The notes under the pieces were generated by a model. The model was not told the DNA's origin. It worked only from the letters and a program-made list of their open reading frames with translations, and ran no database searches. Below, piece by piece: positions 7,441-63,337 of a DNA stretch of 64,000 bases. Position 1 is the first letter of the stretch. Each line of letters begins with the position of its first letter. Made by a program: the position numbers and the translations under genes. The stretch comes from Octopus sinensis (lineage: Eukaryota): NCBI RefSeq assembly GCF_006345805.1, contig NC_043025.1, positions 5,518,001 through 5,582,000 on the forward strand, written 5' to 3'.

Positions 7441-7604
7441 CACAGAAGGCCATATCTGGCCAGTTTGAAGATCAAACTGGAAGATTATTTTGGCCAGATA
7501 TGGCTGGGTTAAACTCTAAGGGTGAAGTATATGTGACATCAATAATCTTTATATTATTAGACCTCCTCTTGGAATTTGTCACCCAACAACCATTTCTACA
7601 CCCA

Positions 7605-23485: not shown

Positions 23486-23487
23486 AG

Positions 23488-24680: not shown

Positions 24681-25809
24681 CTCTCTCTTTATCATTCTTT
24701 ATCACACACTCATTCTCTCTCTCCTTCTTAGTGGGTAGCCTTGTATCTCCTCTACAGCAACACACCTGTTTCTTATTTCTTTATTGCCCACAAGGGGCTA
24801 AACATATAGGAGACAAACAAGGACAGACAAACGGATTAAGTCGATTGCATCGAACCCCAGTGCGTAACTGGTACTTATTTAATCGACCCCGAAAGGATGA
24901 AAGGCAAAGTCGACCTCGGCGGATTTTGAACTCAGAACGTAGCGACAGACAAAATACCGCTAAGCATTTCGCCCGGCGTTCTAACATTTATTTCTTTATT
25001 GCCCACAAGGGGCTAAACATAGAGGGAACAAACAAGGACAGACAAAGGGATTAAGTTGATTGCATCGACCCCAGTGTGTAACTGGTACTTATTTAATCAA
25101 CCCCGAAAGGATGAAAGGTAAAGTTGACCTCAGCCGAATTTGAACTCAGAATGTAACAACAGACGAAATACCTATTTCTTTACTACCCACAAGGGGCTAA
25201 ACATAGAGGGGACAAGCAAGGACAGACAAAGGGATTAAGTCGATTACATCGACCCCAGTGCGTAGGGTCTTCTTTAGTATTAGAGCTAATCCATCTGACA
25301 CTTAATCTCATTGACCTCATTGGATTTGGACAGTCTTAGAGAACTAGGGGCTTGGAGAACTATGGGAGAACCTTACTCTTAAGATCAGTTCAACAAAATA
25401 CTCTCCCCTCCTCAAAAGCTCAAAGGCCTAATGTTGTTAAGGAATATCATATTCTCTGAATATGATATAGATACACTGAAGCTCCAACGTCTGGCAACTG
25501 ACTTAGTAAACACCTACAAAATTACTAACCATCGTGCCAACAACCACCTTGAACACCTCTTTGAGCTCCATGTGTCTAACACATGTGGGCACACCTACCA
25601 AAGTCAGAAAACAGCACAATTCCCATGACTTTTGGAAGCATTTTTTCACTCTCAGAGTTGCTGAAGCATGCAACAAACTACCTGCATCAGTTCCTAGCTG
25701 CTGAGACATTGCATCCTTTAAAACCTCCATGCTTCCTGAAATTCGCCAACACTACACCTGATATCCACCCACCCCATTCTGCTCCATATAACATGCACAC
25801 ATGTATATC

Positions 25810-28756: not shown

Positions 28757-29907
28757 CAGTGGTTCCCAAACTTTATCGGGCTGCTGCCCGCTTGCCCCTC
28801 AGGCCACATTCCTAGTGCCCCCACCTCAGCTAACCATCACAAACATAGACCCCTTTCTGAAGCAAATTCAAAGAAACTGTATTTCACGAATAAAAATTAA
28901 CCTAATGAACCCGTTATTTTGTTGTTTTTACACGAATTGCTACCCCATTATTGCCCCACTTTTTACATGAATCACTACCCCATTATTGCCCCACTTTTTA
29001 CAGGAATCACTACCCATTATTGCCCCAGTTTTTACACGAATCACACCACCCATTATTGCCCTATTTTTTACAGGAATCACTACCCCATTATTGCCCCACT
29101 TTTTACAGGAATTACTACCCCATTATTGCCCCACTTTTTACAGGAATCACTACCCCATTATTGCCTCACTTTTTACACGAATCACTACCCCATTATTGCC
29201 CCACTTTTTACAGGAATTACTATCCCATTATTGCCCCACTTTTTACACGAATCACTACCCCATTATTGCCCTATTTTTTACAGGAATCACTACCCCATTA
29301 TTGCCCCACTTTTTACAGGAATCACTACCCCATTATTGCCCCACTTTTTACAGGAATCACTACCCCATTATTGCCCCACTTTTTACAGGAATTACTACCC
29401 CATTATTGCCCCACTTTTTACAGGAATTACTACCCCATTATTGCTCCACTTTTTACATGAATCACTACCCATTATTGCCCCACTTTTTACACGAATCACT
29501 ACCCCATTATTGCCCCACTTTTTACATGAATTACTACCCCATTATTGCCCCACTTTTTACATGAATCACTATCCCGTTATTGCCCCACTTTTTACATGAA
29601 TCACTACCCCATTATTACCCCACTTTTTACATGAATCACTACCCCATTGTTACCCCACTTTTTACATGAATCCCTACTCCATTATTACCCCACTTTTTAC
29701 ATGAATTCCTACTCCATTATTACCCCACTTTTTACATGAATCACTACCCCATTATTACCCCACTTTTTACATGAATCACTACCCCATTATTGCCCCACTT
29801 TTTACATGAATTACTACCCGATTATTGCCCCACATTCCTTCAACGTTGCTTTGGAACTTTCAACTGCCCTCAGACAGTGACAATACTGCACACTTTGGGA
29901 ACCACTG
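28757..29907. mobile_element. hAT MITE containing a 35-bp minisatellite (~25 copies)
   Basis: TIRs CAGTGGTTCCCAAA / TTTGGGAACCACTG; 8-bp TSD TACAAAAG / TACAATAG; unit TTTTACAGGAATCACTACCCCATTATTGCCCCACT. Confidence 0.9.
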
Positions 29908-31712: not shown

Positions 31713-31829
31713 AAACACAAAAGACTTATCTGCGGAAGACAAATCGGAGATGAAGTCCCTTCAACAGAAACTCTTAGATAGAAAGGAAGCCTTCCGTGAA
31801 CTTGAAGAGTGTTTGCCTCATCAAAACGG
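31713..31829 (+). CDS. TMEM120: TMEM120 exon 3
   Basis: tttcag|A AAC...GG|gtaag. NTKDLSAEDKSEMKSLQQKLLDRKEAFRELEECLPHQN(G), compare MEAYLPKKNG. 117 nt. Confidence 0.92.
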
Positions 31830-33429
31830 GTAAGAAACCAGTTCTGCACACTTCGTTTACTTATGGTTTTGGCCTTTTAACTTCACTTAGTGTTTAATCT
31901 TTTTTTAGTCATTGGACTGTGGCCATGCTGGGGCACTGCCTCGAAGAAATTTAGCTGAATGGATCAATACCAGTACTTTTTTTTTCAAGCCTGGAACTTA
32001 GAATATTGGTGTCTTTTGTCAAACCACTATTTTACGGGGACGTAAACACACCAACTGGTTGTCAGGTGGTAGGGGAGGGGGACAAACACATACACACGCA
32101 CATGTGTGTGTGTGTGTGTGTGAGGGCACATGGCCTAGTGGTTAGGGCAGGCACGTGCTGTCAGTAATTACTCAGGGTTGGCAATTGGTGACCTGTATTT
32201 AGTAAAACACACAAAAAATAAGCAAAAACACAGGTGCATGACTGAGTTGAAGGCAGATTTACTTCTGCCTTTATAACATGTAAAGAAAAAGTTGTTGTAG
32301 GAGTGTACACAGAATGTGTACTACAGCAATATTGTGCGTAGCTTAAATACTGAGATTGAAAAAGCAGGAGAGAATTATGCCTACCTAGGCTACAAAAAAT
32401 TTTAATATTTTGTACTTTATGCACAGTAATCAGAGTAACCTTCATAATTTTATTGAATTAGGGGCATATTTTGCCATAAAAGGAAAATGTTAATATCGAT
32501 CTATTTTATTCAAGTTAGGCTTTGCCTACCTTGGCGGCACGTCCCTGGGTTAGGGGTGCTCCACTCATGATTGCAAGATCATGATTTCAGTTCCTAGACC
32601 AGGTAGCACGTTGTATTCTTGAGCAAAACTCATCTCGTGTTGCTCTGTGATCACTTCGACACCTGACACGTGGTAGACTTGTGCACCTGTTCAGGCAACA
32701 TCGATTTGATGGAGGGAGTGATCCAACGTACAACACGAATATTTGATCACAGTAAACGAATGATTTGTGAAGGTCATTTGGCAAAAAAACTGAACACTCT
32801 TCAATGGGAGAATCCATCATCATGTACAACAAGCTTCGTTCAGTTTCCATCTGCCAAATTCACTCACAAGGCTTTGGTCGGCCCAAGGCTGCAGTGGAAG
32901 ATATTTCCCATGATGCCATGCTGTGGGACTGAACCCGGAACCATGGGGTCAGGAAGCAAGCTTCTTATTTCTTTATTGCCCACAAGGGGCTAAACATAGA
33001 GGGGACAAACAAGGGCAGACAAATGGATTAAATCGATTACATCGACCCCAGTGCATAACTGGTACTTAATTTATCGACCCCGAAAGGATGAAAGGCAAAG
33101 TTGACCTCGGCAGAGTTTGAACTCAGAATGTAACAGCAGATGAAATACCACGAAGCATTTTGCCCAGCGTACTAACATTTGTCAGGTTGCCGCCTTCCTT
33201 ACCACACAGCCACACCTATGTGTCACCTGGTCAGTTTGAATATAAAACGGGCAGAATATTTAGGCCAAGTACGAATGGTTTAAATGCTAAAGGGATAATC
33301 TCTTAGCATCCAAATTACTCTGAGTTAATCCTGTATCATCTTGTAGCTTCATGATTTTAACAATGTGATTGTTTGTTTGTAGAATGACATTGTAAGGTAG
33401 GTGCGAGAGGCAGGATCTGGCCTTGTTTT

Positions 33430-36400
33430 GAATTAATCATGCATTGTCTCATAGCTTTGAGATTTCAAAGATGTGATTGTTTATTTTTAGAATGACATTG
33501 TAGGGTAGGTGTGAGAGGCTGGATCTGGCCTTGTTTTGAATTAATCATGCATTATCTCATAGCTTTGAGATTTCAAAGATGGGATTGTTTATTTTTAGAA
33601 TGACATTGTAGGGTAGGTGTGAGAGGCTGGATCTGGCCTTGTTTTGAATTAATCATGCATTATCTCATAGCTTTGAGATTTCAATGATGTGATTGTTTAT
33701 TTTTAGAATGACATTGTAGGGTAGGTGCGAGAGGCTGGATCTGGCTTTGTTTTGAATTAGTTAGTTAGTTAGTTAATTTGGCTCAAAAGCAAATAGCAAG
33801 GCCATGTAGGGGGACATGGAGTTAAGTACAGGGTGGTGTTCATGTAAAGAGTTCAGGCCATTTGAGGTCCAGGGAGGCTTTGAACAAAGCGGTCGTCGGC
33901 ATCTTCACCATCTCGTTTGGCAGCTTGTTCCACGGATCCGCAACCCGGACGGAGAAAGCTCCTCTCCTTCAATTGAGATGAAATCGTCGCAGGTAGAGCT
34001 TTTCGGAATGACCCCGCAGCCGACGCTCTGGAGCAGGAGTGAAGAACAGCTCTTTCGAGAGGTTACACTTTCCGCTCATGATGTTGTGGGCGAGAATGAG
34101 ATCACCACGGCGGCGGCGTTTTTCAAGAGAATAAAGGTCGAGCGTCCTCAGCCTTTCTTCGTAGGACAAATTTTTGAGACCATGATCCATGCGGGTAGCC
34201 AGCTTCTGGACTCTTTCGAGATGCTGCATGTCTTTGAGGAGATAAGGAGAAGAGGCTTGAATCCCATACTCCAATATGGGTCTCACCAGCGTGACATAGA
34301 GTGTCATTCCGAATGACCGTCGAATCAAGAACAGAATTCCACGTGCTTTGTTGGCAGCATGGACGCACTGGGCCGAAGGTGAAAAGGAGGAATCCACCAA
34401 GATACCCGGTCCTTTACCTGATCGGTCCTCTCCAGCAGCAGACGACCCGGCTCGAAATCAAGTTGAGTTGCAGGAGTAGAGCCGACAGGCAGATGACAGC
34501 ACTTTGACACTTTGCAATTAATCATGCATTGTCTCATAGCTTTGAGATTTCAATGATGTGATTGTTTATTTTTAGAATGACATTGTAGGGTAGGTGTGAG
34601 AGGCTGGATCTGGCCTTGTTTTGAATTAATCATGCATTATCTCATAGCTTTGAGATTCAAATGATATGATTGTTTATATTTAGAATGACATTGTAGGGTA
34701 GGTGTGAGAGGCTGGATCTGGCCTTGTTTTGAATTAATCATGCTTTATCTCATAGCTTTGAGATTTCAAAGATGTGATTGTTTATTTTTAGAATGACATT
34801 GTAGGGTAGGTGTGAGAGACAGGATCTGGCCTTGTTTTGAATTAATCATGCATTATCTCATAGCTTTGAGATTCCAATGATGTGATTGTTTATTTTTAGA
34901 ATGACATTGTAGGGTAGGTGTGAGAGGCAGGATCTGGCCTTGTTTTGAATTAATCATGCATTATCTCATAGCTTTGAGATTTCAAAGATGTGATTGTTTA
35001 TTTTAGAATGACATTGTAGGGTAGGTGTGAGAGGCAGGATCTGGCTTTTTTGAATTAATCATGCATTATCTCATAGCTTTGAGATTTCAATGATGTGATT
35101 GTTTATTTTTAGAATGACATTGTAGGGTAGGTGTGAGAGGCAGGATCTGGCTTTGTTTTGAATTAATCATGCATTATCTCATAGCTTTGAGATTTCAATG
35201 ATGTGATTGTTTATTTTTAGAATGACATTGTAGGGTAGGTGCGAGAGGCCGGATCTGGCCTTGTTTTGAATTAATCATGCATTATCTTATAGCTTTTGAG
35301 GTTTCAATGATGTGATTGTTTATATTTAGAATGACATTGTAGGGTAGGTGTGAGAGGCTGGATCTGGCCTTGTTTTGAATTAAACATGCATTATCTCATA
35401 GCTTTGAGATTCAAATGATGTGATTGTTTATATTTAGAATGACATTGTAGGGTAGGTGTGAGAGGCTGGATCTGGCCTTGTTTTGAATTAATCATGCTTT
35501 ATCTCATAGCTTTGAGATTTCAAAGATGTGATTGTTTATTTTTAGAATGACATTGTAGGGTAGGTGTGAGAGACAGGATCTGGCCTTGTTTTGAATTAAT
35601 CATGCATTATCTCATAGCTTTGAGATTTCAAAGATGTGATTGTTTATATTTAGAATGATATTGTAGGGTAGGTGTGAGAGGCTGGATCTGGCCTTGTTTT
35701 GAATTAATCATGCATTATCTCATAGCTTTGAGATTCCAATGATGTGATTGTTTATTTTTAGAATGACATTGTAGGGTAGGTGTGAGAGGCAGGATCTGGC
35801 CTTCTTTTGAATTAATCATGCATTATCTCATAGCTTTGAGATTTCAATGATGTGATTGTTTATTTTTAGAATGACATTGTAGGGTAGGTGTGAGAGGCAG
35901 GATCTGGCCTTGTTTTGAATTAATCATGCATTATCTCATAGCTTTGAGATTGCAATGATGTGATTGTTTATTTTTAGAATGACATTGTAGGGTAGGTGCG
36001 AGAGGCCGGATCTGGCCTTGTTTTGAATTAATCATGCATTATCTTATAGCTTTTGAGGTTTCAATGATGTGATTGTTTATATTTAGAATGACATTGTAGG
36101 GTAGGTGTGAGAGGCTGGATCTGGCCTTGTTTTGAATTAATCATGCATTATCTCATAGCTTTGAGATTTCAATGATGTGATTGTTTATTTTTAGAATGAC
36201 ATTGTAGGGTAGGTGTGAGAGGCAGGATCTGGCCTTGTTTTGAATTAATCATGCATTATCTCATAGCTTTGAGATTTCAATGATGTGATTGTTTATATTT
36301 AGAATGACATTGTAGGGTAGGTGTGAGAGGCAGGATCTGGCCTTGTTTTGAATTAATCATGCATTATCTCATAGCTTTGAGATTTCAATGATGTGATTGT

Positions 36401-39400
36401 TTATTTTTAGAATGACATTGTAGGGTAGGTGTGAGAGGCAGGATCTGGCCTTGTTTTGAATTAATCATGCATTATCTCATAGCTTTGAGATTTCAATGAT
36501 GTGATTGTTTATTTTTAGAATGACATTGTAGGGTAGGTGTGAGAGGCAGGATCTGGCCTTGTTTTGACTTAATCATGCATTATCTCATAGCTTTGAGATT
36601 TCAATGATGTGATTGTTTATTTTTAGAATGACATTGTAGGGTAGGTGTGAGAGGCAGGATCTGGCCTTGTTTTGAATTAATCATGCATTATCTCATAGCT
36701 TTGAGATTTCAATGATGTGATTGTTTATTTTTAGAATGACATTGTAGGGTAGGTGTGAGAGGCAGGATCTGGCCTTGTTTTGATTAATCATGCATTATCT
36801 CATAGCTTTGAGATTTCAATGATGTGATTGTTTATTTTTAGAATGACATTGTAGGGTAGGTGTGAGAGGCAGGATCTGGCCTTGTTTTGAATTAATCATG
36901 CATTATCTCATAGCTTTGAGATTTCAATGATGTGATTGTTTTTTTTTAGAATGACATTGTAGGGTAGGTGTGAGAGGCAGGATCTGGCCTTGTTTTGAAT
37001 TAATCATGCATTATCTCATAGCTTTGAGATTTCAATGATGTGATTGTTTATTTTTAGAATGACATTGTAGGGTAGGTGTGAGAGGCAGGATCTGGCCTTG
37101 TTTTGAATTAATCTTGCATTATCTCATAGCTTTGAGATTTCAATGATGTGATTGTTTATTTTTAGAATGACATTGTAGGGTAGGTGTGAAAGGCAGGATC
37201 TGGCCTTGTTTTGAATTAATCATGCATTATCTCATAGCTTTGAGATTTCAATGATGTGATTGTTTATTTTTAGAATGACATTGTAGGGTAGGTGTGAGAG
37301 GCAGGATCTGGCCTTGTTTTGAATTAATCATGCATTATCTCATAGCTTTGAGATTTCAATGATGTGATTGTTTATTTTTAGAATGACATTGTAGGGTAGG
37401 TGTGAGAGGCAGGATCTGGCCTTGTTTTGAATTAATCATGCATTATCTCATAGCTTTGAGATTTCAATGATTTGATTGTTTATTTTTAGAATGACATTGT
37501 AGGGTAGGTGTGAGAGGCAGGATCTGGCCTTCTTTTGAATTAATCATGCATTATCTCATAGCTTTGAGATTTCAATGATGTGATTGTTTATTTTTAGAAT
37601 GACATTGTAGGGTAGGTGTGAGAGGCTGGATCTGGCCTTGTTTTGAATTAATCATGCATTATCTCATAGCTTTGAGATTTCAATGATGTGATTGTTTATT
37701 TTTAGAATGACATTGTAGGGTAGGTGTGAGAGGCTGGATCTGGCCTTGTTTTGAATTAATCATGCATTATCTCATAGCTTTGAGATTTCAATGATGTGAT
37801 TGTTTATTTTTAGAATGTCATTGTAGGGTAGGTGTGAGAGGCAGGATCTGGCCTTGTTTTGAATTAATCATGCATTATCTCATAGCTATGAGATTCAAAT
37901 GATGTGATTGTTTATTTTTAGAATGACATTGTTGGGTAGGTGTGAGAGGCTGGATCTGGCCTTGTTTTGAATTAATCATGCATTATCTCATAGCTTTGAG
38001 ATTTCAATGATGTGATTGTTTATTTTTAGAATGACATTGTAGGGTAGGTGTGAGAGGCTGGATCTGGCCTTGTTTTGAATTAATCATGCATTATCTCATA
38101 GCTTTGAGATTTCAATGATGTGATTGTTTATTTTTAGAATGGCATTGTAGGGTAGGTGTGAGAGGCTGGATCTGGCCTTGTTTTGAATTAATCATGCATT
38201 ATCTCATAGCTTTGAGATTTCAATGATGTGATTGTTTATTTTTAGAATGACATTGTAGGGTAGGTGTGAGAGGCTGGATCTGGCCTTGTTTTGAATTAAT
38301 CATGCATTATCTCATAGCTTTGGATTCAAATGATGTGATTGTTTTATTTAGAATGACATTGTAGGGTAGGTGTGAGAGGCAGGATCTGGCCTTGTTTTGA
38401 ATTAATCATGCATTATCTCATAGCTTTGAGATTTCAATGATGTGATTGTTTATTTTAGAATGACATTGTAGGGTAGGTGTGAGAGGCTGGATCTGGCCTC
38501 GTTTTGAATTAATCATGCATTATCTCATAGCTTTGAGATTCAAATGATGTGATTGTTTATATTTAGAATGACATTGTAGGGTAGGTGTGAGAGGCAGGAT
38601 CTGGCCTTGTTTTGAATTAATCATGCATTATCTCATAGCTTTGAGATTCAAATGATGTGATTGTTTATATTTAGAATGACATTGTAGGGTAGGTGTGAGA
38701 GGCAGGATCTGGCCTCGTTTTGAATTAATCATGCATTATCTCATAGCTTTGAGATTTCAATGATGTGATTGTTTATTTTTAGAATGACATTGTAGGGTAG
38801 GTGTGAGAGGCAGGATCTGGCCTTGTTTTGAATTAATCATGCATTATCTCATAGCTTTGAGATTTCAATGATGTGATTGTTTATATTTAGAATGACATTG
38901 TAGGGTAGGTGTGAGAGGCTGGATCTGGCCTGTATTGAATTAAACATGCATTATCTCATAGCTTTGAGATTCCAATGACGTGATTGTTTATTTTAGAATG
39001 ACATTGTAGGGTAGGTGTGAGAGGCTGGATCTGGCCTTGTTTTGAATTAACATGCATTACCTCATAGCTTTGTGATTTCAATGATGAGATTGCATATTTT
39101 AAGAATGACATTGTAGGGTAGGTGTGAGAGGCAGGATCTGGCCTTGTTTTGAATTAATCATGCATTATCTCATAGCTTTGAGATTCCAATGATGTGATTG
39201 TTTATATTTAGAATGACATTGTAGGGTAGGTGTGAAGAGGCTGGATCTGGCCTTGTTTTGAATTAATCATGCATTATCTCATAGCTTTGAGATTTCAATG
39301 ATGTGATTGTTTATTTTTAGAATGACATTGTAGGGTAGGTGTGAGAGCAGGATCTGGCCTTGTTTTGATTAATCATGCATTATCTCATAGCTTTGAGATT

Positions 39401-42330
39401 TCAATGATGTGATTGTTTATTTTTAGAATGACATTGTAGGGTAGGTGTGAGAGGCAGGATCTGGCCTTGTTTTGAATTAATCATGCATTATCTCATAGCT
39501 TTGAGATTTCAATGATGTGATTGTTTATTTTTAGAATGACATTGTAGGGTAGGTGTGAGAGGCAGGATCTGCCTTGTTTTGAATTAATCCTGCATTATCT
39601 CATAGCTTTGAGATTTCAATGATGTGATTGTTTATTTTTAGAATGACATTGTAGGGTAGGTGTGAGAGGCAGGATCTGGCCTTGTTTTGAATTAATCATG
39701 CATTATCTCATAGCTTTGAGATTTCAATGATGTGATTGTTTATTTTTAGAATGACATTGTAGGGTAGGTGTGAGAGGCAGGATCTGGCCTTGTTTTGACT
39801 TAATCATGCATTATCTCATAGCTTTGAGATTTCAATGATGTGATTGTTTATTTTTAGAATGACATTGTAGGGTAGGTGTGAGAGGCAGGATCTGGCCTTG
39901 TTTTGAATTAATCATGCATTATCTCATAGCTTCGAGATTTCAATGATGTGATTGTTTATTTTTAGAATGACATTGTAGGGTAGGTGTGAGAGGCAGGATC
40001 TGGCCTTGTTTTGAATTATCATGCATTATCTCATAGCTTTGAGATTTCAATGATGTGATTGTTTATTTTTAGAATGACATTGTAGGTAGGTGTGAGAGGC
40101 AGGATCTGGCCTTGTTTTGAATTAATCATGCATTATCTCATAGCTTTGAGATTTCAATGATGTGATTGTTTTTTTTTTAGAATGACATTGTAGGGTAGGT
40201 GTGAGAGGCAGGATCTGGCCTTGTTTTTGAATTAATCATGCATTATCTCATAGCTTTGAGATTTCAATGATGTGATTGTTTTTTTTTTAGAATGACATTG
40301 TAGGGTAGGTGTGAGAGGCAGGATCTGCCTTGTTTTGAATTAATCTTGCATTATCTCATAGCTTTGAGATTTCAATGATGTGATTGTTTATTTTTTTAGA
40401 ATGACATTGTAGGGTAGGTGTGAAGGCAGGATCTGGCCTTGTTTTGATTAATCATGCATTATCTCATAGCTTTGAGATTCAATGATGTGATTGTTTATTT
40501 TTAGAATGACATTGTAGGGTAGGTGTGAGAGGCTGGATCTGGCCTTGTTTTGAATTAATCATGCATTATCTCATAGCTTTGAGATTTCAATGATGTGATT
40601 GTTTATTTTTAGAATGTCATTGTAGGGTAGGTGTGAGAGGCAGGATCTGGCCTTGTTTTGAATTAATCATGCATTATCTCATAGCTATGAGATTCAATGA
40701 TGTGATTGTTTATTTTTAGAATGACATTGTTGGGTAGGTGTGAGAGGCTGGATCTGGCCTTGTTTTGAATTAATCATGCATTATCTCATAGCTTTGAGAT
40801 TTCAATGATGTGATTGTTTATTTTAGAATGACATTGTAGGGTAGGTGTGAGAGGCTGGATCGGCCTTGTTTTGAATTAATCATGCATTATCTCATAGCTT
40901 TGAGATTTCAATGATGTGATTGTTTATTTTTAGAATGGCATTGTAGGGTAGGTGTGAGAGGCTGGATCTGGCCTTGTTTTGAATTAATCATGCATTATCT
41001 CATAGCTTTGAGATTTCAATGATGTGATTGTTTATTTTTAGAATGACATTGTAGGGTAGGTGTGAGAGGCTGGATCTGGCCTTGTTTTGAATTAATCATG
41101 CATTATCTCATAGCTTTGAGATTCAAATGATGTGATTGTTTATTTTTAGAATGACATTGTAGGGTAGGTGTGAGAGGCAGGATCTGGCCTTGTTTTGAAT
41201 TAATCATGCATTATCTCATAGCTTTGAGATTTCAATGATGTGATTGTTTATTTTAGAATGACATTGTAGGGTAGGTGTGAGAGGCTGGATCTGGCCTCGT
41301 TTTGAATTAATCATGCATTATCTCATAGCTTTGAGATTCAAATGATGTGATTGTTTATATTTAGAATGACATTGTAGGGTAGGTGTGAGAGGCAGGATCT
41401 GGCCTTGTTTTGAATTAATCATGCATTATCTCATAGCTTTGAGATTCAAATGATGTGATTGTTTATATTTAGAATGACATTGTAGGGTAGGTGTGAGAGG
41501 CAGGATCTGGCCTTGTTTTGAATTAATCATGCATTATCTCATAGCTTTGAGATTCAAATGATGTGATTGTTTATATTTAGAATGACATTGTAGGGTAGGT
41601 GTGAGAGGCAGGATCTGGCCTCGTTTTGAATTAATCATGCATTATCTCATAGCTTTGAGATTTCAATGATGTGATTGTTATTTTAGAATGACATTGTAGG
41701 GTAGGTGTGAGAGGCAGGATCTGGCCTTGTTTTGAATTAATCATGCATTATCTCATAGCTTTGAGATTTCAATGATGTGATTGTTTATATTTAGAATGAC
41801 ATTGTAGGGTAGGTGTGAGAGGCTGGATCTGGCCTTGTATTGAATTAAACATGCATTATCTCATAGCTTTGAGATTCCAATGACGTGATTGTTTATATTT
41901 AGAATGACATTGTAGGGTAGGTGTGAGAGGCTGGATCTGGCCTTGTTTTGAATTAAACATGCATTACCTCATAGCTTTGTGATTTCAATGATGAGATTGC
42001 ATATTTTAAGAATGACATTGTAGGGTAGGTGTGAGAGGCAGGATCTGGCCTTGTTTTGAATTAATCATGCATTATCTCATAGCTTTGAGATTCCAATGAT
42101 GTGATTGTTTATATTTAGAATGACATTGTAGGGTAGGTGTGAGAGGCTGGATCTGGCCTTGTTTTGAATTAATCATGCATTATCTCATAGCTTTGAGATT
42201 CCAATGATGTGATTGTTTATATTTAGAATGACATTGTAGGGTAGGTGTGAGAGGCAGGATCTGGCCTTGTTTTGAATTAATCATGCATTATCTCATAGCT
42301 TTGAGATTCCAATGATGTGATTGTTTATTT
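33430..42330 (+). repeat. 108-bp satellite array (~75 monomers) in TMEM120 intron 3
   Basis: Period of 108 measured (e.g. 36241 to 36349). Monomer TGAATTAATCATGCATTATCTCATAGCTTTGAGATTTCAATGATGTGATTGTTTATTTTTAGAATGACATTGTAGGGTAGGTGTGAGAGGCAGGATCTGGCCTTGTTT. Confidence 0.98.
33760..34515 (-). mobile_element. CR1/L2-type LINE 3' fragment with (TAAC)n tail, inserted in the 108-bp satellite
   Basis: LYVTLVRPILEYG...LERVQKLATR...SYEERLRTLDLYSLEKRRRRGDLI; frameshifted upstream. Possible AATTA TSD. Confidence 0.92.
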
Positions 42331-43499
42331 ATGTAATCGACTTGACTCCTTTGTCTGTCCTTGTTTGTCCCCTCTATGTTTAGTCCCTTTTGGGCAATAA
42401 AGAAATAAGTATTTTGTCTGTCTTTATGTTCTGAGTTCAAATTCCGCTGAGGTCGACTTTGCCTTTCATCCTTTCGGGGTTGATGAAATAAGTACCAGTT
42501 ATGCACTGGGGTCAATGTAATCGACCCAGATTTCAGGCCTTGTGCCTACAGTAGAATGAAGTGTCTTGTAACTTTGAGCTCCCAGTGAGGCAATTGTTTA
42601 TTTTTAGAATGACATTGTAAGGTCGGTGCAAGAGGTTGGATGTGGCCAGGTTGAACATAAAACAATATTTGGGCCAGATATGGTCAGTTTAAATGCTAAA
42701 AGGTCAATGGGAAAATGTGAAGCCATGCAACATGTTTATCTGGGTCTTTTTGTTACATTTTGGCTGTGTGGTAAGTAGCTTGCTAACCAACCACATGGTT
42801 CCGGGTTCAGTTCCACTGCGTGGCATCTTGAGCAAGTGTCTTCTGCTATAGCCTCGGGCCGACCAATGCCTTGTGAGTGGATTTGGTAGACAGAGACTGA
42901 AAGAAGCCCGTCGTATATATGTATATATATATATATGTGTGTGTTTGTGTGTCTGTGTTTGTCCCCATAGTATTGCTTGACAACCGATGCTGGTGTGTTT
43001 ATGTCCCCGTTACTTAGCGGTTCGGCAAAAGAGACCGATAGAATAAGTACTGGGCTTACAAAGAATAAGTCCCGGGTCGAGTTGCTTGATTAAAGGCGGT
43101 GCTCCAGCATGGCCGCAGTCAAATGACTGAAACAAGTAAAAGAGTAAAGAGTAATTGTTTGCACGTGTTGTCCGTGTGCTTACATATTTGGGTGTTTGTC
43201 TGTGTTCTTGTCAATGGACACCGTTCCTCGTTAGCAACCATATAGATACATGTGGTGCATGGGACTTCATTGTAACATTTCAGTTCCTCTGAATTCAGCA
43301 TTTTTTCTCCCCCTATGAACCCTTTCGATTTCTATTTTACATGGATTGACCTCCATAGCTATTCGATGTTTAAAAAAAAATCGTATAATATATTCATAAT
43401 TAAATATTATTAGGAAGTGTAAAAAAATAATTAAATATTTTGCGTATTGTTGAAGTATAAACAAAATACTTACACATAAGCTTTAACAAGATCTTATAT

Positions 43500-43997
43500 G
43501 GACCCCCAAGAGTCATCTGGACGCCTGAGAGTCGTATGAACCCCCGAGAGTCGTACGAACTCCCGAGAGTCGTACGAACCCCCGAGAGTCGTACGAACCC
43601 CCGAGAGTCGTACGAACCCCCGAGAGTCGTACGAACCCCCGAGAGTCGTACGAACCCCCGAGAGTCGTATGAACCCCCGAGAGTTGTACGAACCCCCGAG
43701 AGTTGTACGAACCCCCGAGAGTCGTACGAAACCCCCCCCCCTCGAGTATTCTATCCCCCCCCCCCGAGAGTCGTACGAACCCCCCCGAGAGTCGTACGAA
43801 CCCCCCTGAGAGTCGTACGAACCCTCCCAAGAGTCGTACAAACCCCCCGAGAGTCGTACGGACACTCCCGAGAGTCGTACGAACCCCCCCCCCCCCCCCG
43901 AGAGTCGTACGACCCCCCCTCCGAGAGTCGTATGGGACCCCGCCGAGAGTCATGCAGACCCTACGAGAGTCGTACGGACCCTGGTTAAGAACCACTA
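43500..43997. repeat. 19-bp minisatellite ending in a hAT-like TIR
   Basis: Unit CGAACCCCCGAGAGTCGTA; ends CCCTGGTTAAGAACCACTA. Second array at 48310-48790 ends TTCAACCACTG. Confidence 0.9.
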
Positions 43998-45215: not shown

Positions 45216-47480
45216 GTGCTTCCTTCAGTTTCTGTCAATAAAATCCACTCACAAGGCTTTGGCCAGTCTGGGCTAGTGCCATGCAGTGGGGCTGAACCTG
45301 GAACCATGTGGTTGGTAAGTAATCTTACCACACAACAATGCCAGCACCTTAGTCTCCCCATGCGATGCACTATTTGTGCACAACTGCACTAAAGTGTTGC
45401 AGCACACGTCGGAAAGCATTTCATCGAAGAATATGGTTCTTCTATTAATAAATCAAGGCACAGGAGTGGCTGTGTGGTAAGTAGCTTGCTTACCAACCAC
45501 GTGGTTCTGGGTTCAGTTCCACTGCGTGGCACCTTGGGCAAGTGTCTTCTACTACAGCCTCGGGCCGACCAAAGCCTTGTGAATGGATTTGGTAGACGGA
45601 AACTGAAAGAAGCCCGTCGTATATATGTATGTTTTCTGTATGTATGTGTGTGAGCGTGTATGTTTGTGTGTCTGTGTTTGTCCCCCTAGCATTGCTTGAC
45701 AACCGATGCTGGTATGTGTACGTCCCCGTCACTTAGCGGTTCGGCAAAGGAGACCGATAGAATAAGTACTGGGCTTACAAAGAATAAGTCCCGGAGTCGA
45801 TTTGCTCGACTAAAGGCGGTGCTCCAGCATGGCCGCAGTCGAATGACTGAAACAAGTAAAAGAGTAAAGGATGGTCTTCTCTGGAATGTCTCCTGGATCC
45901 ATTTGATCAGCTCTCACCTGGTGCTAAACAAAAATTGCTCCAGGAAAATCGCTGTCGAACAGGAGACGACAAACAGGGGACGATATTAAAAGGGATTTCA
46001 CTTATAAATTTATATATTTTCAGGAAGCTCTTTACTGCCTTGTCTATACTTCACCTTCCTGCAACACACCCCCTTCTTTTATATTTGAACTTCAGTATAC
46101 CAAGGTAAACTTTATAGCCACATAAAGCTTTCTCAGCCTCTACGCTCCATCCCATCATCCCCTCCTTATTTTATCTTCCATCTTTTTACCTTGCAATTAA
46201 TATATTTCCTCCGCAGTCCTTCTGATATGTTATTACTACTGCATCACTACTGCAGTTTCGATACCGCTGCATTGTTACTGCCACTTTGATACTGCTGCGA
46301 TGTTACCACTGCATTGATACCATTGCATTGTTTCCGCTGTATTACCGCTTATTCGTTACCGCATCCTTGCTGCTTTTACCAAGCTTTTTTTAACCCTTAA
46401 CCCTTTAGCATTTAAACCGGCCATATCCGGCCAAAATATTCTCCCTTGTTTTATGTTCAAATTGGCCAGATCTGGCTTCTCACACCAGCCCTACTATATA
46501 ATTCTTGGCTGTGTGGTAAGTAGCTTGCTTACCAACCACATGTTTCCGGGTTCAGTCCCACTGCATGGCACCTTGGGCAAGTGTCTTCTACTATAGCCTC
46601 GGGCCGACCAATGCCTTGTGAGTGGATTTGGTAGACGGAAACTAAAAGAAGCCTGTCGTATATATGTATATATATATATGTGTATGTGTGTGTGTTTGTG
46701 TGTCTGTGTTTGTTCTCCTAGCATTGCTTGACAACCGATGCTGGTGTGTTTACGTCCCCGTCACTTAGCGGTTCGGCAAAAAGAGACCGATAGAATAAGT
46801 ACTGGGCTTACAAAAAAGAATAAGTCCCGGGGTCAAGTTGCTCGACTAAAGGCGGTGCTCCAGCATGGCTGCAGTCAAATAACTGAAACAAGTAAAAGAG
46901 TAAAAGAGTAAAGAGTATTACTTTTGACAGAATAATGTGAATACACCTTGACTGGCTTCTGTGCTGGTGGCACGTAAAAAGCACCATCCGATCATGGCCG
47001 TCTGCCAGCCTTGCCTGGCCTCCGTGCCGGTGGCACGTAAAAAGCACCAACTGATCGTGGCCATTGCCAGCCTCCCCTGGCACCTGTGCCAGTGGCACGT
47101 AAAAAGCACCCATTACACTCATGGAGTGGTTGGCGTTAGGAAGGGCATCCAGCTGTAGAAACGCTTCCAGATCAGACTGGAGCCTGGTGCAGCCTCCTGG
47201 CTTCCCAGATCCCCGGTCGAACGTCCAACCCATGCTAGCATGGAAAGCGGACGTTAAATGATGATGATGAGGTTCAATGTTAATCAAAGGAAGTCGTAAG
47301 TCTCCTCTTCGACTCATTGCATAATTATTTCGTTGCTTCGTCAGCAATTGCGGCATTGCACCAAATCCTTTGTATAATTTCTTTGGCATTCAGTCGGTTA
47401 TGACGACGAGGGTTCCAGTTGATCCGATCAACGGAACAGCCTGCTTGTGAAAGTAATGTGTAAGCGGTTCAGACATGTGT

Positions 47481-48060: not shown

Positions 48061-51060
48061 AATGAACAGTATAGCTTGTTTGCTGGTCAATATTCTCATT
48101 TATCATGTGACCACATGACTGACCAGACTATCAGATGTTGTTACACATTGCTGGTCACAATGCTCTTTGCATTGTTTTAGCCTTTAAACGATGCCACCCA
48201 ACTGGCTAGGTGAGCGGGCCAACATTTCCCCAACTGATTGAAAAGGGGGAAACGGAGCAACTTGATATGAAGTGTTTTGCTCAAGAACACAACACACCGT
48301 ATCTGGATGCCTGGGAGTCGTACGAACTCCCGAGAGTCATGGGAGCCTCCGAGAGTCGTACGAACCCCCGAGAGTCGTACGAACCCCCGAGAGTCGTACG
48401 AACCCCCGAGAGTCGTACGAACCCCCGAGAGTCGTACGAACCCCCGAGAGTCGTACGAACCCCCGAGAGTCGTACGAACCCCCGAGAGTCGTACGAACCC
48501 CCGAGAGTCGTACGAACCCCGAGAGTCGTACGAACCCCCGAGAGTCGTACGAACCCCCGAGAGTCGTACGAACCCCCGAGAGTCGTACGATCCCCCGAGA
48601 GTCGTACGATCCCCCGAGAGTCGTAGGGAGCCTCTGAGGGTGTATCCCCTTGAGAGTCTACGGACCCCCCGAGTATTCTATGCCCCCTCGAGTATTCTAT
48701 GCCCCCTCCCCTGAGAGTCGTATGGGACCCCGCCGAGAGTTATGCAGACCCCCGAGAGTCATACGGACCCTGGTTGGTTTTCAACCACTGACCCATGGTC
48801 AAGCAATCATGAATGTGACTGCCTAGCTACTAGGCCATACACCTTCACATTTTCTTTATTGATATTCAGTTATAATTCCTGTGTTGTGTGGGTCGCTATC
48901 TAGAAAATGTTCAATAGGTTTTTATCTCCTAATCCATTGAAATGAGAAAAGAAAAAGAAATCACTTTTGTTCATGTTGTTGTGTTTGCTCAAATCTGTAT
49001 ACTCTTACTCCTACTTGTTTCAGTCATTTGACTGCGGCCATGCTGGAGCACCGCCTTTAGTCGGGCAAATCGACCCCGGGACTTATTCTTTTGTAAGCCC
49101 AGTACTTATTCTATCGGTCTCTTTTGCCGAACCGCTAAGTGACGGGGACATAAACACACCAGCATTGGTTGTCAAGCAATGCTAGACACACGAACATATA
49201 CACATACACACAGACACACGAACATATACACACACATACATATATACGACAGGCTTCTTTCAGTTTCCGTCTACCAAATCCACTCACAAGGCATTGGTCG
49301 GCCCGAGGCTATAGCAGAAGACACTTGCCCAAGGTGCCATGCAGTGGGACTGAACCCGGAACAATGTGGTTGGTTAGCAAGTTACTTACCACACAGCCAC
49401 TCCTGCGCCTGTATGTTTAGGTTGTTTTATCTTTTACCTGTTTCGGCCATTAGGCTGTGGCCATACTGGGGCACTGCCTTGAAGAATTACATAGTCGAAT
49501 GAATTAAAAGCTTGATATTTACTATATCATTCTCTTTTTGCTGAACCACTAAGTTACTGGGATGTAAACACACCAACACCAGTTGTGAAGGAGGACACAC
49601 AGACACACGTAAAAGACCCCTTCTGTTATGACTGACCATGGAATTGTACCAAGAAAATTCCCTTCTGAGACACTAGTCTGAACAAGGTTGCTTCGTGGAA
49701 GACCAGCAGTCGCCCATGCATACCAGCCTCCCGTCTCTGCCACTGATGTTATCCAAGGGAAAGGCAAAGGGGCCGATACAGCTTGGCACCTGTGAAGTCA
49801 CAACTCATTTCTACACCTGAGCGGACTGGAGTGATATGAAATAAAGTGTCTTGCTCAAGAACACAACACACAGCCCGGTCTGGGATTTGAACTCACTGCT
49901 TCATGATTATAAGCCTGATGTTCTAACCACTGAACCATATACCTATTTCTTTACTACCCACAAGGTGCTAAACACAGAGAGGACAAACAAGGACAGACAG
50001 AGGGATTAAGTCGATAACATCGACCCCAGTGCGTAACTGGTACTTATTTAATCAACCCCGAAAGGATGACAGGCAAAGTCGACCTCGGCGGAATTTGAAC
50101 TCAGAACGTAATGGCAGATGAAATACCTATTTCTTTACTACCCACAAGGGGCTAAACACAGAGAGGACAAACAAGGACAGACAGAGGGATTAAGTCGATT
50201 ACATCGATCCCAGTGCGTAACTGGTACTTATTTAATCAACCCCGAAAGGATGACAGGCAAAGTCGACCTCGGCGGAATTTGAACTCAGAACGTAGCAGCA
50301 GACGGAATACCGCAAAGCATTTCGCCCGACGTGCTAACGTTTCTGCCAGTTTGTGACGGAACCATATACCTTCACACACACACACACACACACACTATGC
50401 TTTTTTCAATTTCCATCTACCAAATCCATGCACATGCCTTTTGTCGGCCCAGGGCTGTGGAAGAAGACACTTGCCCAAGGTGCCACTCAGTGGGACTGAA
50501 CCCAGAACTATGTGGTTGGGAAGCAAGCTTCTTACCACACAGCAATACCTGCGCATTACCAATCTTTCAAAAGATGTTTTTTTTATCTCACAATCCATTG
50601 AAATGAGGGAAAAAGAAACTGTCTTTGTTGTTGTTTTGTGTGTGTGTGTGCTTAGATTTTTGTATTTTTAGGAGTGTTCCTCAAAATATCTCTATATCTT
50701 GGCGCAGGAGTGGCTGTGTGCTAAGTAGCTTGTTTACCAACCACATGGTTCCGGGTTCAGTCCCACTGCGTGGCACCTTGGGCAAGTGTCTTCTACTATA
50801 GCCTCGGGCCGACCAAAGCCTTGTGAGTGGATTTGGTAGACTGAAACTGAAAGAAGCCCGTCGTATATATGTATATATATATATATATATATAGGTGCAG
50901 GAGTGGCTGTGTGCTAAGTAGCTTGTTTACCAACCACATGGTTCCGGGTTCAGTCCCACTGCGTGGCACCTTGGGCAAGTGTTTTCTACTATAGCCTCGG
51001 GCTGACCAAAGCCTGTTGAGTGGATTTGGTAGACAGAAACTGAAAGAAGCCCGTCATATG

Positions 51061-51098
<38 letters not shown>

Positions 51099-53301: not shown

Positions 53302-53361
53302 GTTGTACTTGAGTGTCATTCTGGGCCAAGTCAACGTATCGCTGCTCAACAAAGGAGACAA
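53302..53361 (+). CDS. TMEM120: TMEM120 exon 4
   Basis: catttag|G TTG...AA|gtaagt. LYLSVILGQVNVSLLNKGD(K), compare [20 protein letters not shown]. 60 nt. Confidence 0.95.
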
Positions 53362-58958: not shown

Positions 58959-59048
58959 ATGGGTAGATGCAGTCCTTCACTTTCTCCTCGTCTGGTATTA
59001 TTGTACGTTGACCATCAGAGAGAGTATTCTTGTCGTGAATGGATCCAG
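58959..59048 (+). CDS. TMEM120: TMEM120 exon 6
   Basis: ttgcag|A TGG...AG|gtaac. [29 protein letters not shown](R), near-identical to the family motif [17 protein letters not shown]. 90 nt. Confidence 0.97.
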
Positions 59049-59074
59049 GTAACAAAATAACATTATATACCTGC

Positions 59075-60203
59075 TCCGTCAAATGTATTGCTTATTTATC
59101 CACATTCTTTTAAATTAATCGTGCATTATCTCATAGCTTTGAGATTTCAATGATGTGATTGTTTATTTTAAGAATGACATTGTAGGGTAGGTGTGAGAGG
59201 CTGGATCTGGCCTTGTTTTGAATTAATCCTGCATTATCTCACAGCAGGTCTTCACAAGCACAGTTTATTGGTCAATGGTTAAAGGGTACTCTTAAATCGG
59301 CCAGTTATGCTGCACTGGCATAGGCCACGGTTACGGTTTCACTTGACTTGCCGGGTCTTCTCACGCACAGCATATCTCCAAAGGTTTCAATCACTTGTCA
59401 TTGCCTCCGTGAGACCCAACGTTGAGATTTCAAAGATGTGATTGTTTATTTTTAGAATGACATTGTAGGGTAGGTGTGAGAGGCTGGATCTGGCCTTGTT
59501 TTGAATTAATCATGCATTATCTCATAGCTTTGAGATTTCAATGATGTGATTGTTTATTTTTAGAATGACATTGTAGGGTAGGTGTGAGAGGCAGGATCTG
59601 GCCTTGTTTTGAATTAATCCTGCATTATCTCATAGCTTTGAGATTTCAATGATGTGATTGTTTATTTTAAGAATGACATTGTAGGGTAGGTGTGAGAGGC
59701 AGGATCTGGCCTTGTTTTGAATTAATCATACATTGTCTCGTAGCTTTGAGATTACAAAGATGGGATTGCATATTTTTAGAATGACATTGTAGGGTAGGTG
59801 GGAGAAGCAGGGTCTGGCCTTGTTTTGAATTAATCATGCATTATCTCATAGCTTTGAGATTTCAATGATGTGATTGTTTATTTTTAGAATGACATTGTAG
59901 GGTAGGTGTGAGAGGCTGGATCTGGCCTTGTTTTGAATTAATCATGCATTATCTCATTGCTTTGAGATTTCAATGATGTGATTGTTTATTTTTAGAATGA
60001 CATTGTAGGGTAGGTGTGAGAGGAAGGATCTGGCCTCGTTTTGAATTAATCATGCATTATCTCATAGCTTTGAGATTTCAATGATGTGATTGTTTATTTT
60101 TAGAATGACATTGTAAGGTAGGCATGAGGGATCTGGATGGTTCAACATAAAGCATGTAGAATAATTGCGCCAGTTATGGCTAGTTTAAATGCTAAAGGGT
60201 TAA
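59075..60203 (+). repeat. Second 108-bp array (~8 monomers) filling TMEM120 intron 6
   Basis: Same monomer; ends in AAATGCTAAAGGG|TTAA; interrupted by a ~190-bp repeat fragment at about 59245-59420. Confidence 0.95.
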
Positions 60204-60263
60204 GCTCCAAATGTCTACACACTAAACATCACTTATTCAAAGATTTTTCCCCTTCTGTTTCAG

Positions 60264-60329
60264 AATCAAAGGATGGTGGTTGACTCATCATTTCATTTCA
60301 ACAGTTTGTGCGGGGATTTCCTTAATATG
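60264..60329 (+). CDS. TMEM120: TMEM120 exon 7
   Basis: tttcag|A ATC...TG|gtgagg. IKGWWLTHHFISTVCAGISLI(W), keeps the WWxxHH ELOVL-like/CoA-site motif. 66 nt. Confidence 0.96.

Positions 60330-63304: not shown

Positions 63305-63337
<33 letters not shown>

What the first reader, a model, noticed from the sequence alone, without database searches (positions are those of the whole stretch)
33300..42707. A 9-kb intronic satellite apparently born inside a piggyBac-like MITE
The 108-bp array ends in a non-repeated arm (42590-42707: ...GGCCAG-TTGAACATAAAAC...TTTAAATGCTAAAAGG). The same arm closes the second array at 60203 (AAATGCTAAAGGG|TTAA). It also occurs inverted and array-free at 46397-46494 (TTAA|CCCTTTAGCATTT), a TTAA-CCC terminus typical of piggyBac. 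A degenerate complementary TTAGCAT start lies at about 33304. The monomer therefore looks like the interior of a small MITE amplified about 75-fold, making up about 40% of TMEM120 intron 3.
Basis: partly seen in the sequence, partly recalled or inferred. Interest (0 to 1): 0.72.

Follow-up and report, generated by a model that had tools for sequence, protein, structure and literature searches.

The report
Transposon-borne 108-bp repeat array in TMEM120 introns
A small, probably piggyBac-type, mobile element sitting in two introns of a TMEM120 gene has multiplied its 108-bp interior into arrays of about 78 and 8 copies; this is a clear but ordinary example of a known way that tandem repeats arise.

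Summary
A 108-bp tandem array of about 77.6 units lies at 33322-42647. It is broken by a LINE fragment and a SINE-like unit, and it makes up 39% of the 21,472-bp intron 3 of a TMEM120 gene (PF07851, E 7e-81). A second array of 7.9 units fills about 92% of intron 6. Both end in the same non-repeated right arm, which stops at ...AAAGGG followed by TTAA. That arm occurs five times in the window. All five flanks are TTAA or one mismatch from it (P about 1e-7). The CCCTTT...AAAGGG plus TTAA signature fits piggyBac-type MITEs and not Kolobok or Helitron.

The left inverted repeat is degenerate and not statistically significant. No complete one-unit element exists in the window, because the only array-free copy with unit sequence is cut by a SINE. 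No outside copies could be found.

New here: the two arrays have identical consensus units, yet their arms are only 85% identical and their edge units are 78-92% identical to the consensus. So the array interiors are much younger than the insertions, and they share one pool of variants.

This kind is known (Xenopus Xmix/Xstir, miDNA4, clam DTC84). It is a new member of a known kind, of modest interest.

The parts
7444..7526 (+). Diverged solo right-arm copy (a7). It ends ...CTCTAAGGG at 7522 and has the flank TGAA at 7523-7526. Its inner side abuts a SINE.
   Evidence: nhmmer E 3.9e-23. A 14-bp subterminal hairpin has z = -6.0.
33227..33294 (+). Solo right-arm copy (a33), ending ...GCTAAAGGG. 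Its inner side abuts the head of a reverse-oriented SINE.
   Evidence: E 2.6e-21
33295..33298 (.). ATAA, a TTAA-like tetranucleotide shared between the end of a33 and the start of element 1 (tail-to-head arrangement).
33299..33321 (+). Left arm of element 1. TCTCTTAGCAT is the candidate left terminus (8 of 11 to CCCTTTAGCAT), followed by CCAAATTACTCT.
   Evidence: not significant by shuffling. It shares ATCCA.ATT with the left edge of array 2.
33322..33759 (+). Array 1, left part: 4 units. The first (edge) unit is 85% identical to the consensus and the others are 97%.
33760..34510 (-). 5'-truncated LINE fragment inserted into a unit. It has a (TAAC)n-type tail and the target duplication TTTGAATTA / TTTGCAATTA.
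   Evidence: A 98.4% identical copy lies at 52571-53077.
34511..42330 (+). Array 1, main part: 72.4 units. The centre (36134-37753) differs from the consensus at 0-2 positions per unit. Multi-unit block duplications occur at lags of 7 and 26/27 units.
42331..42525 (.). SINE-like 184-bp-unit element inserted at unit position 57. Unit positions 58-87 are missing at this point.
   Evidence: 43 related copies in the window
42526..42647 (+). Old, unhomogenised terminal 1.1 units of array 1 (78% identical to the consensus).
42648..42707 (+). Right arm of element 1, ending ...GCTAAAAGG at 42703, with the flank TCAA at 42704-42707.
46397..46505 (-). Inverted, array-free copy. It reads TTAA (46397-46400), then CCCTTTAGCAT..., then the arm, then 42 nt of unit-like sequence (unit positions 60-101, 81% identity). 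A SINE starting at 46506 cuts it off.
59088..59104 (+). Approximate left arm of element 2 (TTGCTTATTTATCCACATT), starting about 39 nt after the 5' splice site of intron 6.
   Evidence: The boundary is uncertain by about 10 nt.
59105..59245 (+). Array 2, first 1.3 units.
59246..59421 (.). Insertion of 176 bp inside a unit. It is unique in the window and has no target duplication.
59422..60136 (+). Array 2, remaining 6.6 units. The last (edge) unit is 92% identical to the consensus.
60137..60203 (+). Right arm of element 2, ending ...GCTAAAGGG at 60199, then TTAA at 60200-60203. It lies 60 nt before exon 7.
31713..31829 (+). TMEM120 exon 3 (upstream border of intron 3).
53302..53361 (+). TMEM120 exon 4 (downstream border of intron 3).
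58959..59048 (+). TMEM120 exon 6.
60264..60329 (+). TMEM120 exon 7.

Best explanation
A family of small non-coding DNA transposons that insert at TTAA, most likely piggyBac-type, left at least five copies in this 64-kb stretch. With one unit, such an element would be about 190-200 bp: a left arm of about 23 bp, a 108-bp interior and a right arm of about 56-63 bp.

In two copies, in introns 3 and 6 of TMEM120 and both in sense orientation, the 108-bp interior became tandemly repeated. The repeated unit runs from ...TYTRAR|TTAATC at the inner end of the left arm to ...GGATCTGGCC-nn-TTTGAA at the start of the right arm. It was therefore bracketed by a short direct repeat. The first duplication most likely arose by slippage or unequal exchange at that microhomology (inferred).

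The arrays then grew by unequal exchange, including duplications of blocks of 7 and about 13 units (shown). Turnover was confined to the interior. The outermost units and the arms kept their old, diverged sequence (shown).

The interiors of both arrays carry the same young consensus and share variants. So units were exchanged between the two arrays, or both draw on a common genomic pool (inferred). The arrays are most likely neutral intron filler that splicing tolerates.
For: Same ends at independent loci. The two arrays have the same arms, but their 500-bp flanks are unrelated (best E 0.03).

Termini. There are five right-arm copies. The terminus 21-mer matches 4 times against 0 expected. All five flanks are within one mismatch of TTAA and two are exact, with P about 1e-7. 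The CCCTTT...AAAGGG termini plus TTAA match the stated piggyBac hallmark (TIR with a CC[C/T]T motif and TTAA duplications) and match coral piggyBac elements and MITEs with CCCTTT/AAAGGG ends (PMC2872659).

Unit sequence belongs to the element. The array-free copy at 46401-46505 carries unit-like sequence at 81% identity next to its arm. The unit's 3' end pairs with the arm in a subterminal hairpin (a7 z = -6.0, a46 z = -2.1).

Age structure. Edge units are 85%, 78% and 92% identical to the consensus, while central units are 99-100%. At alignment column 98 the three edge units of both arrays have A and all 81 other units have G. The two array consensus sequences are identical over 108 of 108 positions and share polymorphisms. 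The arms proper are 84.9% identical, with a Kimura two-parameter distance (K2P) of 0.17 and 9 gap positions.

Growth. Block duplications are visible at lags of 7 and 26/27 units.

Real, older DNA. A LINE insertion with a target duplication and a SINE-like insertion show the array is real and predates those insertions.
Against: - The left terminal inverted repeat is weak. TCTCTTAGCAT matches CCCTTTAGCAT at 8 of 11 positions, and local alignment against shuffles is not significant.
- A second candidate left end, TTAA followed by TCCTGTATCAT at 33325-33339, is equally good.
- Element 2 has no recognisable left terminus.
- Both flanks of element 1 are degenerate (ATAA and TCAA).
- No intact one-unit copy is in the window.
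- Two of the five arms (a7, a33) keep only about 10-20 nt of unit-like sequence, and three of the five abut a SINE head on the inner side. This is unexplained.
- The left edge unit of array 2 is not diverged (97%).
- No autonomous partner and no copies outside the window were available.
Confidence: 0.65

Rival explanations
1. The satellite came first. A pre-existing 108-bp satellite was captured by a MITE, or young array segments were copied into old, pre-existing MITE copies by recombination or by reintegration of circular DNA. On this view the MITE is the carrier or landing pad and not the source of the unit.
For: The arms and edge units are much older than the array interiors. The arms proper are 85% identical, while the two consensus units are identical. 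Two arms (a7, a33) have almost no unit sequence. Capture of a pre-existing repeat was proposed for the Xenopus element miDNA4 (PMC12628747).
Against: The edge units are themselves old and contiguous with the arms. The array-free 46401 copy has diverged unit sequence (81%) at the same position relative to the arm. The unit's 3' end is part of the arm's subterminal hairpin. These points indicate that unit sequence belonged to the element from early on.
Confidence: 0.2
2. The ends belong to a TTAA-targeting element that is not piggyBac, such as Kolobok/T2-type or another 4-bp-duplication superfamily. Alternatively they are not transposon ends at all, only conserved sequence that travels with a dispersed repeat.
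For: TTAA targeting is shared by Kolobok/T2-MITEs, whose member Xmix gave rise to the Xstir tandem repeats (PMC6004289). The left inverted repeat is not significant. No transposase partner was found.
Against: Kolobok termini begin with RR/AGGRR, whereas these begin with CCC. Helitron features (5'-TC, 3'-CTRR, insertion between A and T without a duplication) are absent. The sharp loss of similarity exactly after GGG+TTAA in five copies is what a transposon end looks like.
Confidence: 0.1
3. The two arrays are a segmental duplication, or an assembly artefact of a single array.
For: The consensus units are identical and both arrays are in the same orientation in one gene.
Against: The flanks are unrelated. 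Array 2 lies between exons 6 and 7 with intact splice sites. It has its own diverged arm and edge unit and a unique 176-bp insertion. Array 1 shows structured variants, and a LINE insertion with a target duplication.
Confidence: 0.03

Closest known systems
Xenopus Xmix (T2-MITE) and its Xstir tandem repeats (Hikosaka and Kawahara 2000, 2004; as described in PMC6004289 and PMC12628747)
   Same: It is a TTAA-inserting MITE whose internal segment is amplified into tandem arrays. MITE-only, array, and composite MITE-plus-array forms coexist.
   Different: Xmix is assigned to Kolobok (termini AGGRR), whereas here the termini are CCCTTT...AAAGGG (piggyBac type). The host differs: the window looks like a mollusc or cephalopod, but this is unverified. 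The one-unit form is not seen in the window.
Xenopus miDNA4 (Tc1/mariner MITE carrying a satellite; Scalvenzi and Pollet, as described in PMC12628747)
   Same: The repeat is present as one unit or as a variable number of units inside a MITE. The unit is bracketed by short direct repeats, which were proposed to drive expansion by microhomology. Here the bracketing repeat is TYTRAR, about 6 nt.
   Different: The superfamily differs (TA target). There, capture of a pre-existing repeat was proposed.
DTC84 of the clam Donax trunculus, and the pearl-type elements of bivalves (PMC3879986; PMC12628747)
   Same: These are molluscan non-autonomous elements with a central block of a variable number of tandem units between non-repeated arms, and they are linked to satellite DNAs.
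   Different: DTC84 carries only up to about five core repeats. Several bivalve elements of this kind are thought to be Helitron-related (from memory). Here there are about 78 units and a TTAA/CCC signature.
Coral CMITEs and AmiPB piggyBac-like elements (PMC2872659)
   Same: They have TTAA duplications and CCCTTT...AAAGGG termini. One, AmiPB5 (CCCTTAGAG...), matches the a7 terminus CCCTTAGAG. Tandem arrangements there were attributed to replication slippage.
   Different: The coral arrays are tandem copies of whole MITEs, not of an interior unit, and they are short.

Membership tests
piggyBac/TTAA-type MITE | Insertion at TTAA | tested here: met
   The flanks of the five right ends are TTAA, TTAA, ATAA, TCAA and TGAA, with P about 1e-7 from window tetramer frequencies.
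piggyBac/TTAA-type MITE | TTAA duplicated on both sides of the same element | tested here: inconclusive
   Element 1 has ATAA on the left and TCAA on the right, both one mismatch from TTAA. The left boundary of element 2 is not defined.
piggyBac/TTAA-type MITE | Terminal inverted repeats of 12-19 bp beginning CC[C/T]T (PMC2872659) | tested here: inconclusive
   The right terminus reads CCCTTTAGCAT when reverse-complemented (CCCTTAGAG in a7 and CCTTTTAGCAT in a42). The left terminus matches at only 8 of 11 positions and is not significant against shuffles. Two candidate left ends lie 30 bp apart.
piggyBac/TTAA-type MITE | Small, non-coding, multi-copy | tested here: met
   Element 2 is confined to a 1,215-bp intron and has no ORF. 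There are five arm copies in 64 kb. A complete one-unit copy was not found in the window.
piggyBac/TTAA-type MITE | Autonomous partner with a piggyBac transposase that shares the termini | not testable with these tools
   The window has no transposase-sized ORF outside its repeats, and the source genome is not in any collection. piggyBac families are reported in Octopus vulgaris (PMC13282606), but the source organism of the window is unverified.
Kolobok / T2-MITE | TTAA target plus termini beginning RR (AGGRR) (PMC6004289) | tested here: not met
   The TTAA feature is met, but the termini begin CCC and end GGG.
Helitron/Helentron-borne tandem repeats (bivalve type) | 5'-TC and 3'-CTRR ends, a 3' hairpin, and insertion between A and T without a duplication (from established knowledge) | tested here: not met
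   The element ends ...AAAGGG and similarity stops exactly before a conserved TTAA in five copies. There is no CTRR end.
Tandem-repeat-containing MITE (Xmix/Xstir, miDNA4, DTC84 kind) | The same non-repeated arms enclose a variable number of internal units at different loci | tested here: met
   There are 77.6 units at 33322-42647 and 7.9 units at 59105-60136, with homologous right arms, similar left edges and unrelated flanks.
Classical satellite DNA | Long homogeneous arrays that are abundant across the genome | not testable with these tools
   An 8.4-kb array with concerted-evolution features is present, but its genome-wide abundance is unknown.

The most novel reading that the evidence does not exclude
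Old MITE copies act as landing pads that are repeatedly re-seeded with the currently dominant variant of the 108-bp unit. The route could be gene conversion or unequal exchange between arrays 17 kb apart in two introns of one gene, or reintegration of circular array fragments. The two arrays would then evolve in concert even though their carrier elements are anciently diverged. If so, this locus would be a compact natural system for watching a satellite spread between dispersed sites.
Probability: 0.25. Interest if true: 0.5.

Novelty: new member of a known kind. Interest (0 to 1): 0.3.

Why it matters
- **A clean record of each stage.** The locus shows a tandem array growing out of the interior of a TTAA-type MITE, with the stages still readable: old arms and edge units, a young homogenised core, block duplications, and later retroelement insertions that date it.
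- **Possible taxonomic extension.** If the source is a cephalopod, as the SINE content suggests (from memory, unverified), it would extend the Xenopus and bivalve phenomenon to another repeat-rich lineage, and to the piggyBac type.
- **A question for splicing.** One TMEM120 intron is 39% repeat and another is about 92% transposon. Each unit carries, on the sense strand, an acceptor-like TTGTTTATTTTTAG and donor-like AG|GTGTGAG. So the gene must splice correctly past about 86 decoy pairs.
- **Overall.** None of this changes current understanding. The value is as a well-resolved example and as a marker for copy-number variation.

Tried and rejected
- **Outside copies.** I ran exact-pattern scans with the terminus and with the unit core. 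The viral contig scans found nothing. The metagenome scan gave one hit, which lies in what reads as a bacterial protein-coding region and is a chance match. The bacterial and archaeal genome scans gave no hit for the unit core and 28 hits for a degenerate arm pattern. With the arm HMM, those 28 match only the seeded 20-mer region. No outside copies are available.
- **Orthologous loci.** The protein database returned only short TMEM120 fragments at 88% identity or less, so no orthologous introns could be fetched.
- **More copies in the window.** An nhmmer search with an arm HMM found no copies beyond the five.
- **Left inverted repeat.** Smith-Waterman alignments against shuffles were not significant.
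- **RNA.** The Rfam and tRNA scans were empty. The unit shows no unusual fold (z = -1.6).
- **Autonomous partner.** No transposase-sized ORF lies outside the repeats.
- **LINE fragment.** Pfam gave no hit on it. Calling it CR1/L2-like rests on my recollection of the LVRP.LEY...SLEKRR motif.
- **Source organism.** A literature search for the SINE sequence strings found nothing, so the source organism stays unverified.
- **Exon probe.** I then confirmed them independently by canonical splice sites and a Pfam score on the spliced product.
- **Rejected readings.** Segmental duplication is rejected because the flanks are unrelated. Helitron and Kolobok membership is rejected because the termini do not fit.
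Full report
**What is there**

The window is extremely repeat-rich animal DNA, with 118 TRF rows. It carries a TMEM120 gene on the + strand. I then checked them independently. Eight exons have canonical AG/GT borders and splice into an open 250-codon frame. That product scores E 7.3e-81 against Pfam PF07851 (TMEM120A/B), covering profile positions 2-217 of 324. A 52-residue translation of exons 6-7 also retrieved only PF07851 proteins.

Intron 3 spans 31830-53301 (21,472 bp). Intron 6 spans 59049-60263 (1,215 bp).

**The arrays**

TRF reports a 108-bp array at 33321-33759 (4.1 copies) and 34511-42330 (72.6 copies, 96% matches, score 14425). It reports a second array at 59422-60122. Mapping the consensus unit by blastn adds a degenerate end piece at 42526-42647 and a first piece of the second array at 59105-59245.

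Array 1 holds 8,380 bp of repeat, which is 77.6 units and 39% of intron 3. The whole element 33300-42707 is 43.8% of intron 3. Array 2 holds 7.9 units and, with its arms, fills about 92% of intron 6. About 39 nt of other sequence remain after the 5' splice site and 60 nt before the 3' splice site.

Three later insertions interrupt the arrays:
- **33760-34510:** a 5'-truncated LINE fragment with a (TAAC)n-type tail and the target duplication TTTGAATTA / TTTGCAATTA. A 98.4% identical copy lies at 52571-53077.
- **42331-42525:** a SINE-like 184-bp-unit element.
- **59246-59421:** a unique 176-bp piece.

**The arms**

Both arrays end in a non-repeated right arm of about 56-63 nt that stops at ...GTTTAAATGCTAAAGGG. 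The arm occurs five times in the window: 7444-7522 (+), 33227-33294 (+), 42648-42703 (+), 46401-46505 (-) and 60137-60199 (+). nhmmer E-values range from 1e-31 to 3e-21, and no further copies were found.

The 21-mer TTAACCCTTTAGCATTTAAAC matches four times with up to 3 mismatches, against none in 100 shuffles. Similarity ends exactly after GGG. The next four bases are TTAA, TTAA, ATAA, TCAA and TGAA. Given the tetramer frequencies of the window, five flanks within one mismatch of TTAA with two exact has P about 1e-7.

The copy at 33227-33294 sits tail-to-head against element 1 through a single ATAA (33295-33298). That is what an insertion into the TTAA flanking an existing copy would produce.

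**Which superfamily**

The published hallmark of piggyBac elements and their MITEs is a TTAA duplication plus 12-19-bp inverted repeats with a CC[C/T]T terminal motif. Coral piggyBac elements and MITEs have CCCTTT.../...AAAGGG ends (PMC2872659). The right ends here fit that.

TTAA targeting alone is not diagnostic. Kolobok/T2-MITEs also use TTAA, but their termini begin RR/AGGRR (PMC6004289), which is not met here. Helitron features are absent.

The weak point is the left end. TCTCTTAGCAT at 33299-33309 matches the expected CCCTTTAGCAT at 8 of 11 positions. Local alignments of the left edges against the inverted right arms are not better than shuffles. A second, equally good candidate (TTAA at 33325-33328 followed by TCCTGTATCAT) lies 30 bp further in, at the start of the first unit. 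The left edges of the two arrays do resemble each other (ATCCAAATTACTCTGAGTTAATC against ATCCACATTCTTTTAAATTAATC). So a short common left arm is likely, but its terminus is not established.

**Is the unit part of the element?**

Three observations say yes.
1. The 500-bp flanks of the two arrays are unrelated (best E 0.03). The same ends therefore enclose 78 units at one independent locus and 8 at another.
2. The inverted, array-free copy at 46401-46505 carries 42 nt homologous to unit positions 60-101, at 81% identity, in the same position relative to the arm. A roughly 410-bp SINE then cuts it off at 46506.
3. The last 15 or so nt of the unit form the other half of a subterminal hairpin with the arm (GCCATATCTGGCCAG...TTGGCCAGATATGGC; a7 z = -6.0, a46 z = -2.1).

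However, no complete one-unit element is present in the window. The copies at 7444 and 33227 keep only about 10-20 nt of unit-like sequence before a SINE head begins.

**How the array formed and evolves**

The unit boundary is informative. Inside the array the junction reads GGATCTGGCC-TTGTTTTGAA|TTAATC. The right arms begin GGCC-AGTTTGAA / AATTTGAA / AGGTTGAA and then diverge (CATAAAAC...). The left arms end CTCTGAG or TTTTAAA before TTAATC. nhmmer alignments of units to the arm model run about 17 columns past GGCC.

So the amplified segment was bracketed by a short direct repeat, roughly TYTRAR. The first duplication is best explained by slippage or unequal exchange at that microhomology. 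This is inference. It is the same model proposed for miDNA4, as summarised in PMC12628747.

Later growth by unequal exchange is visible directly:
- A 7-unit block, 34623-35268, recurs at 35377-36025.
- A block of about 13 units, 37861-39258, recurs at 40660-42165, at a lag of 26/27 units.
- The centre, 36134-37753, differs from the consensus at 0-2 positions per unit.

**Age structure (new here)**

- The outermost units are diverged. The first unit of array 1 is 85% identical to the consensus, the last of array 1 is 78%, and the last of array 2 is 92%. Interior units are mostly 95-100%.
- At alignment column 98 (TGTA[G/A]GG) the three edge units of both arrays have A, and all 81 other units have G.
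- The consensus units of the two arrays are identical at 108 of 108 positions and share polymorphisms at about ten columns.
- The arms proper of the same two elements are only 84.9% identical (K2P 0.17, plus 9 gap positions). Arm pairs overall are 70-88% identical.

The insertions are therefore old. The array interiors are young, and both arrays draw on one pool of unit variants. This could be through exchange between the two arrays 17 kb apart or through a genome-wide pool, and the window cannot tell which.

One inconsistency remains: the left edge unit of array 2 is not diverged (97%).

**Comparison with what is known**

Tandem arrays derived from MITE interiors are established:
- Xenopus Xmix/Xstir: a TTAA-type MITE with MITE, array and composite forms (PMC6004289; PMC12628747).
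- Xenopus miDNA4: one to many units inside a Tc1/mariner MITE, with a unit bracketed by short direct repeats (PMC12628747).
- DTC84 and pearl-type elements of bivalves (PMC3879986).
- Tandem coral CMITEs (PMC2872659).

The present case works like these. It differs in its piggyBac-type termini, in the size of the array relative to the carrier, and in its position in two introns of one gene.

A recent Octopus vulgaris repeat annotation lists piggyBac and MITE families but no such satellite (PMC13282606). The window's organism could not be verified, however. No outside copies were obtainable.

**Verdict**

This is a new member of a known kind, of modest interest (0.3). The most novel reading not excluded is concerted re-seeding of old MITE copies with young satellite variants.

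Noticed in passing
7360-7443, 33000-33226, 46506-46915: Three of the five arm copies (a7, a33, a46) abut the 5' head of a SINE on their inner side. The relative orientation is the same in all three, and the breakpoints lie only about 12, 18 and 45 nt inward of the arm. No target duplication or continuation of the MITE is seen beyond the SINE at 46916. This could be a hotspot near the subterminal hairpin or a composite element. It is unexplained.
   Followed up: partly
2507-3410, 4324-4829, 6311-7311, 12449-12999, 49939-50294, 50686-51225, 55809-56364, 56742-57087: SINE-derived sequences repeatedly form short tandem arrays of 2-5 units with periods of 151-193 bp. Turning interspersed elements into tandem repeats therefore seems to be a general habit of this genome, not a peculiarity of the 108-bp unit.
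   Followed up: no
33760-34510 and 52571-53077: Two LINE 3' fragments, 751 and 507 bp long, are 98.4% identical. Both are antisense in intron 3 and share the same (TAAC)n-type end, which points to a young family with variable 5' truncation. The best frame reads ...LVRPILEYGIQASSPYLLKDMQHLERVQ...LYSLEKRRRRGDLI..., which looks CR1/L2-like from memory. Pfam gave no hit.
   Followed up: partly
43496-43981 and 48315-48770: Two arrays of a 19-bp minisatellite (ACCCCCGAGAGTCGTACGA) are about 82% alike. They share a right-edge motif, GGACCCTGGTT..AACCAC, which suggests a second family of element-borne tandem repeats in the same intron.
   Followed up: partly
23487-24682, 28925-29833, 57661-58206, 62639-63337: Further large minisatellites lie in and downstream of the TMEM120 introns: 26 bp x 46, 35 bp x 26 (starting 206 bp after exon 2), 24 bp x 23, and a 16-bp AC-rich unit x 44.
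   Followed up: no
each unit, e.g. 36134-36241 (+ strand): On the sense strand every unit carries an acceptor-like TTGTTTATTTTTAG|AA. Donor-like GG|GTAGGT and AG|GTGTGAG follow 14-18 nt later. That gives about 86 potential decoy micro-exons within two introns. This was judged by eye and not scored.
   Followed up: no
46386-46411: The flank of the inverted copy reads TTTTTTTAACCCTTAACCCTTTAGCAT, so TTAACCC occurs twice in tandem at the terminus. This could be a footprint or a small terminal duplication.
   Followed up: no
19668-21211: The 1.5 kb upstream of the TMEM120 start codon (21230) is almost entirely CT-rich and AC/AT-rich low-complexity repeats, with a strong C-over-G skew (GC skew -0.52 for 20001-22000).
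   Followed up: no
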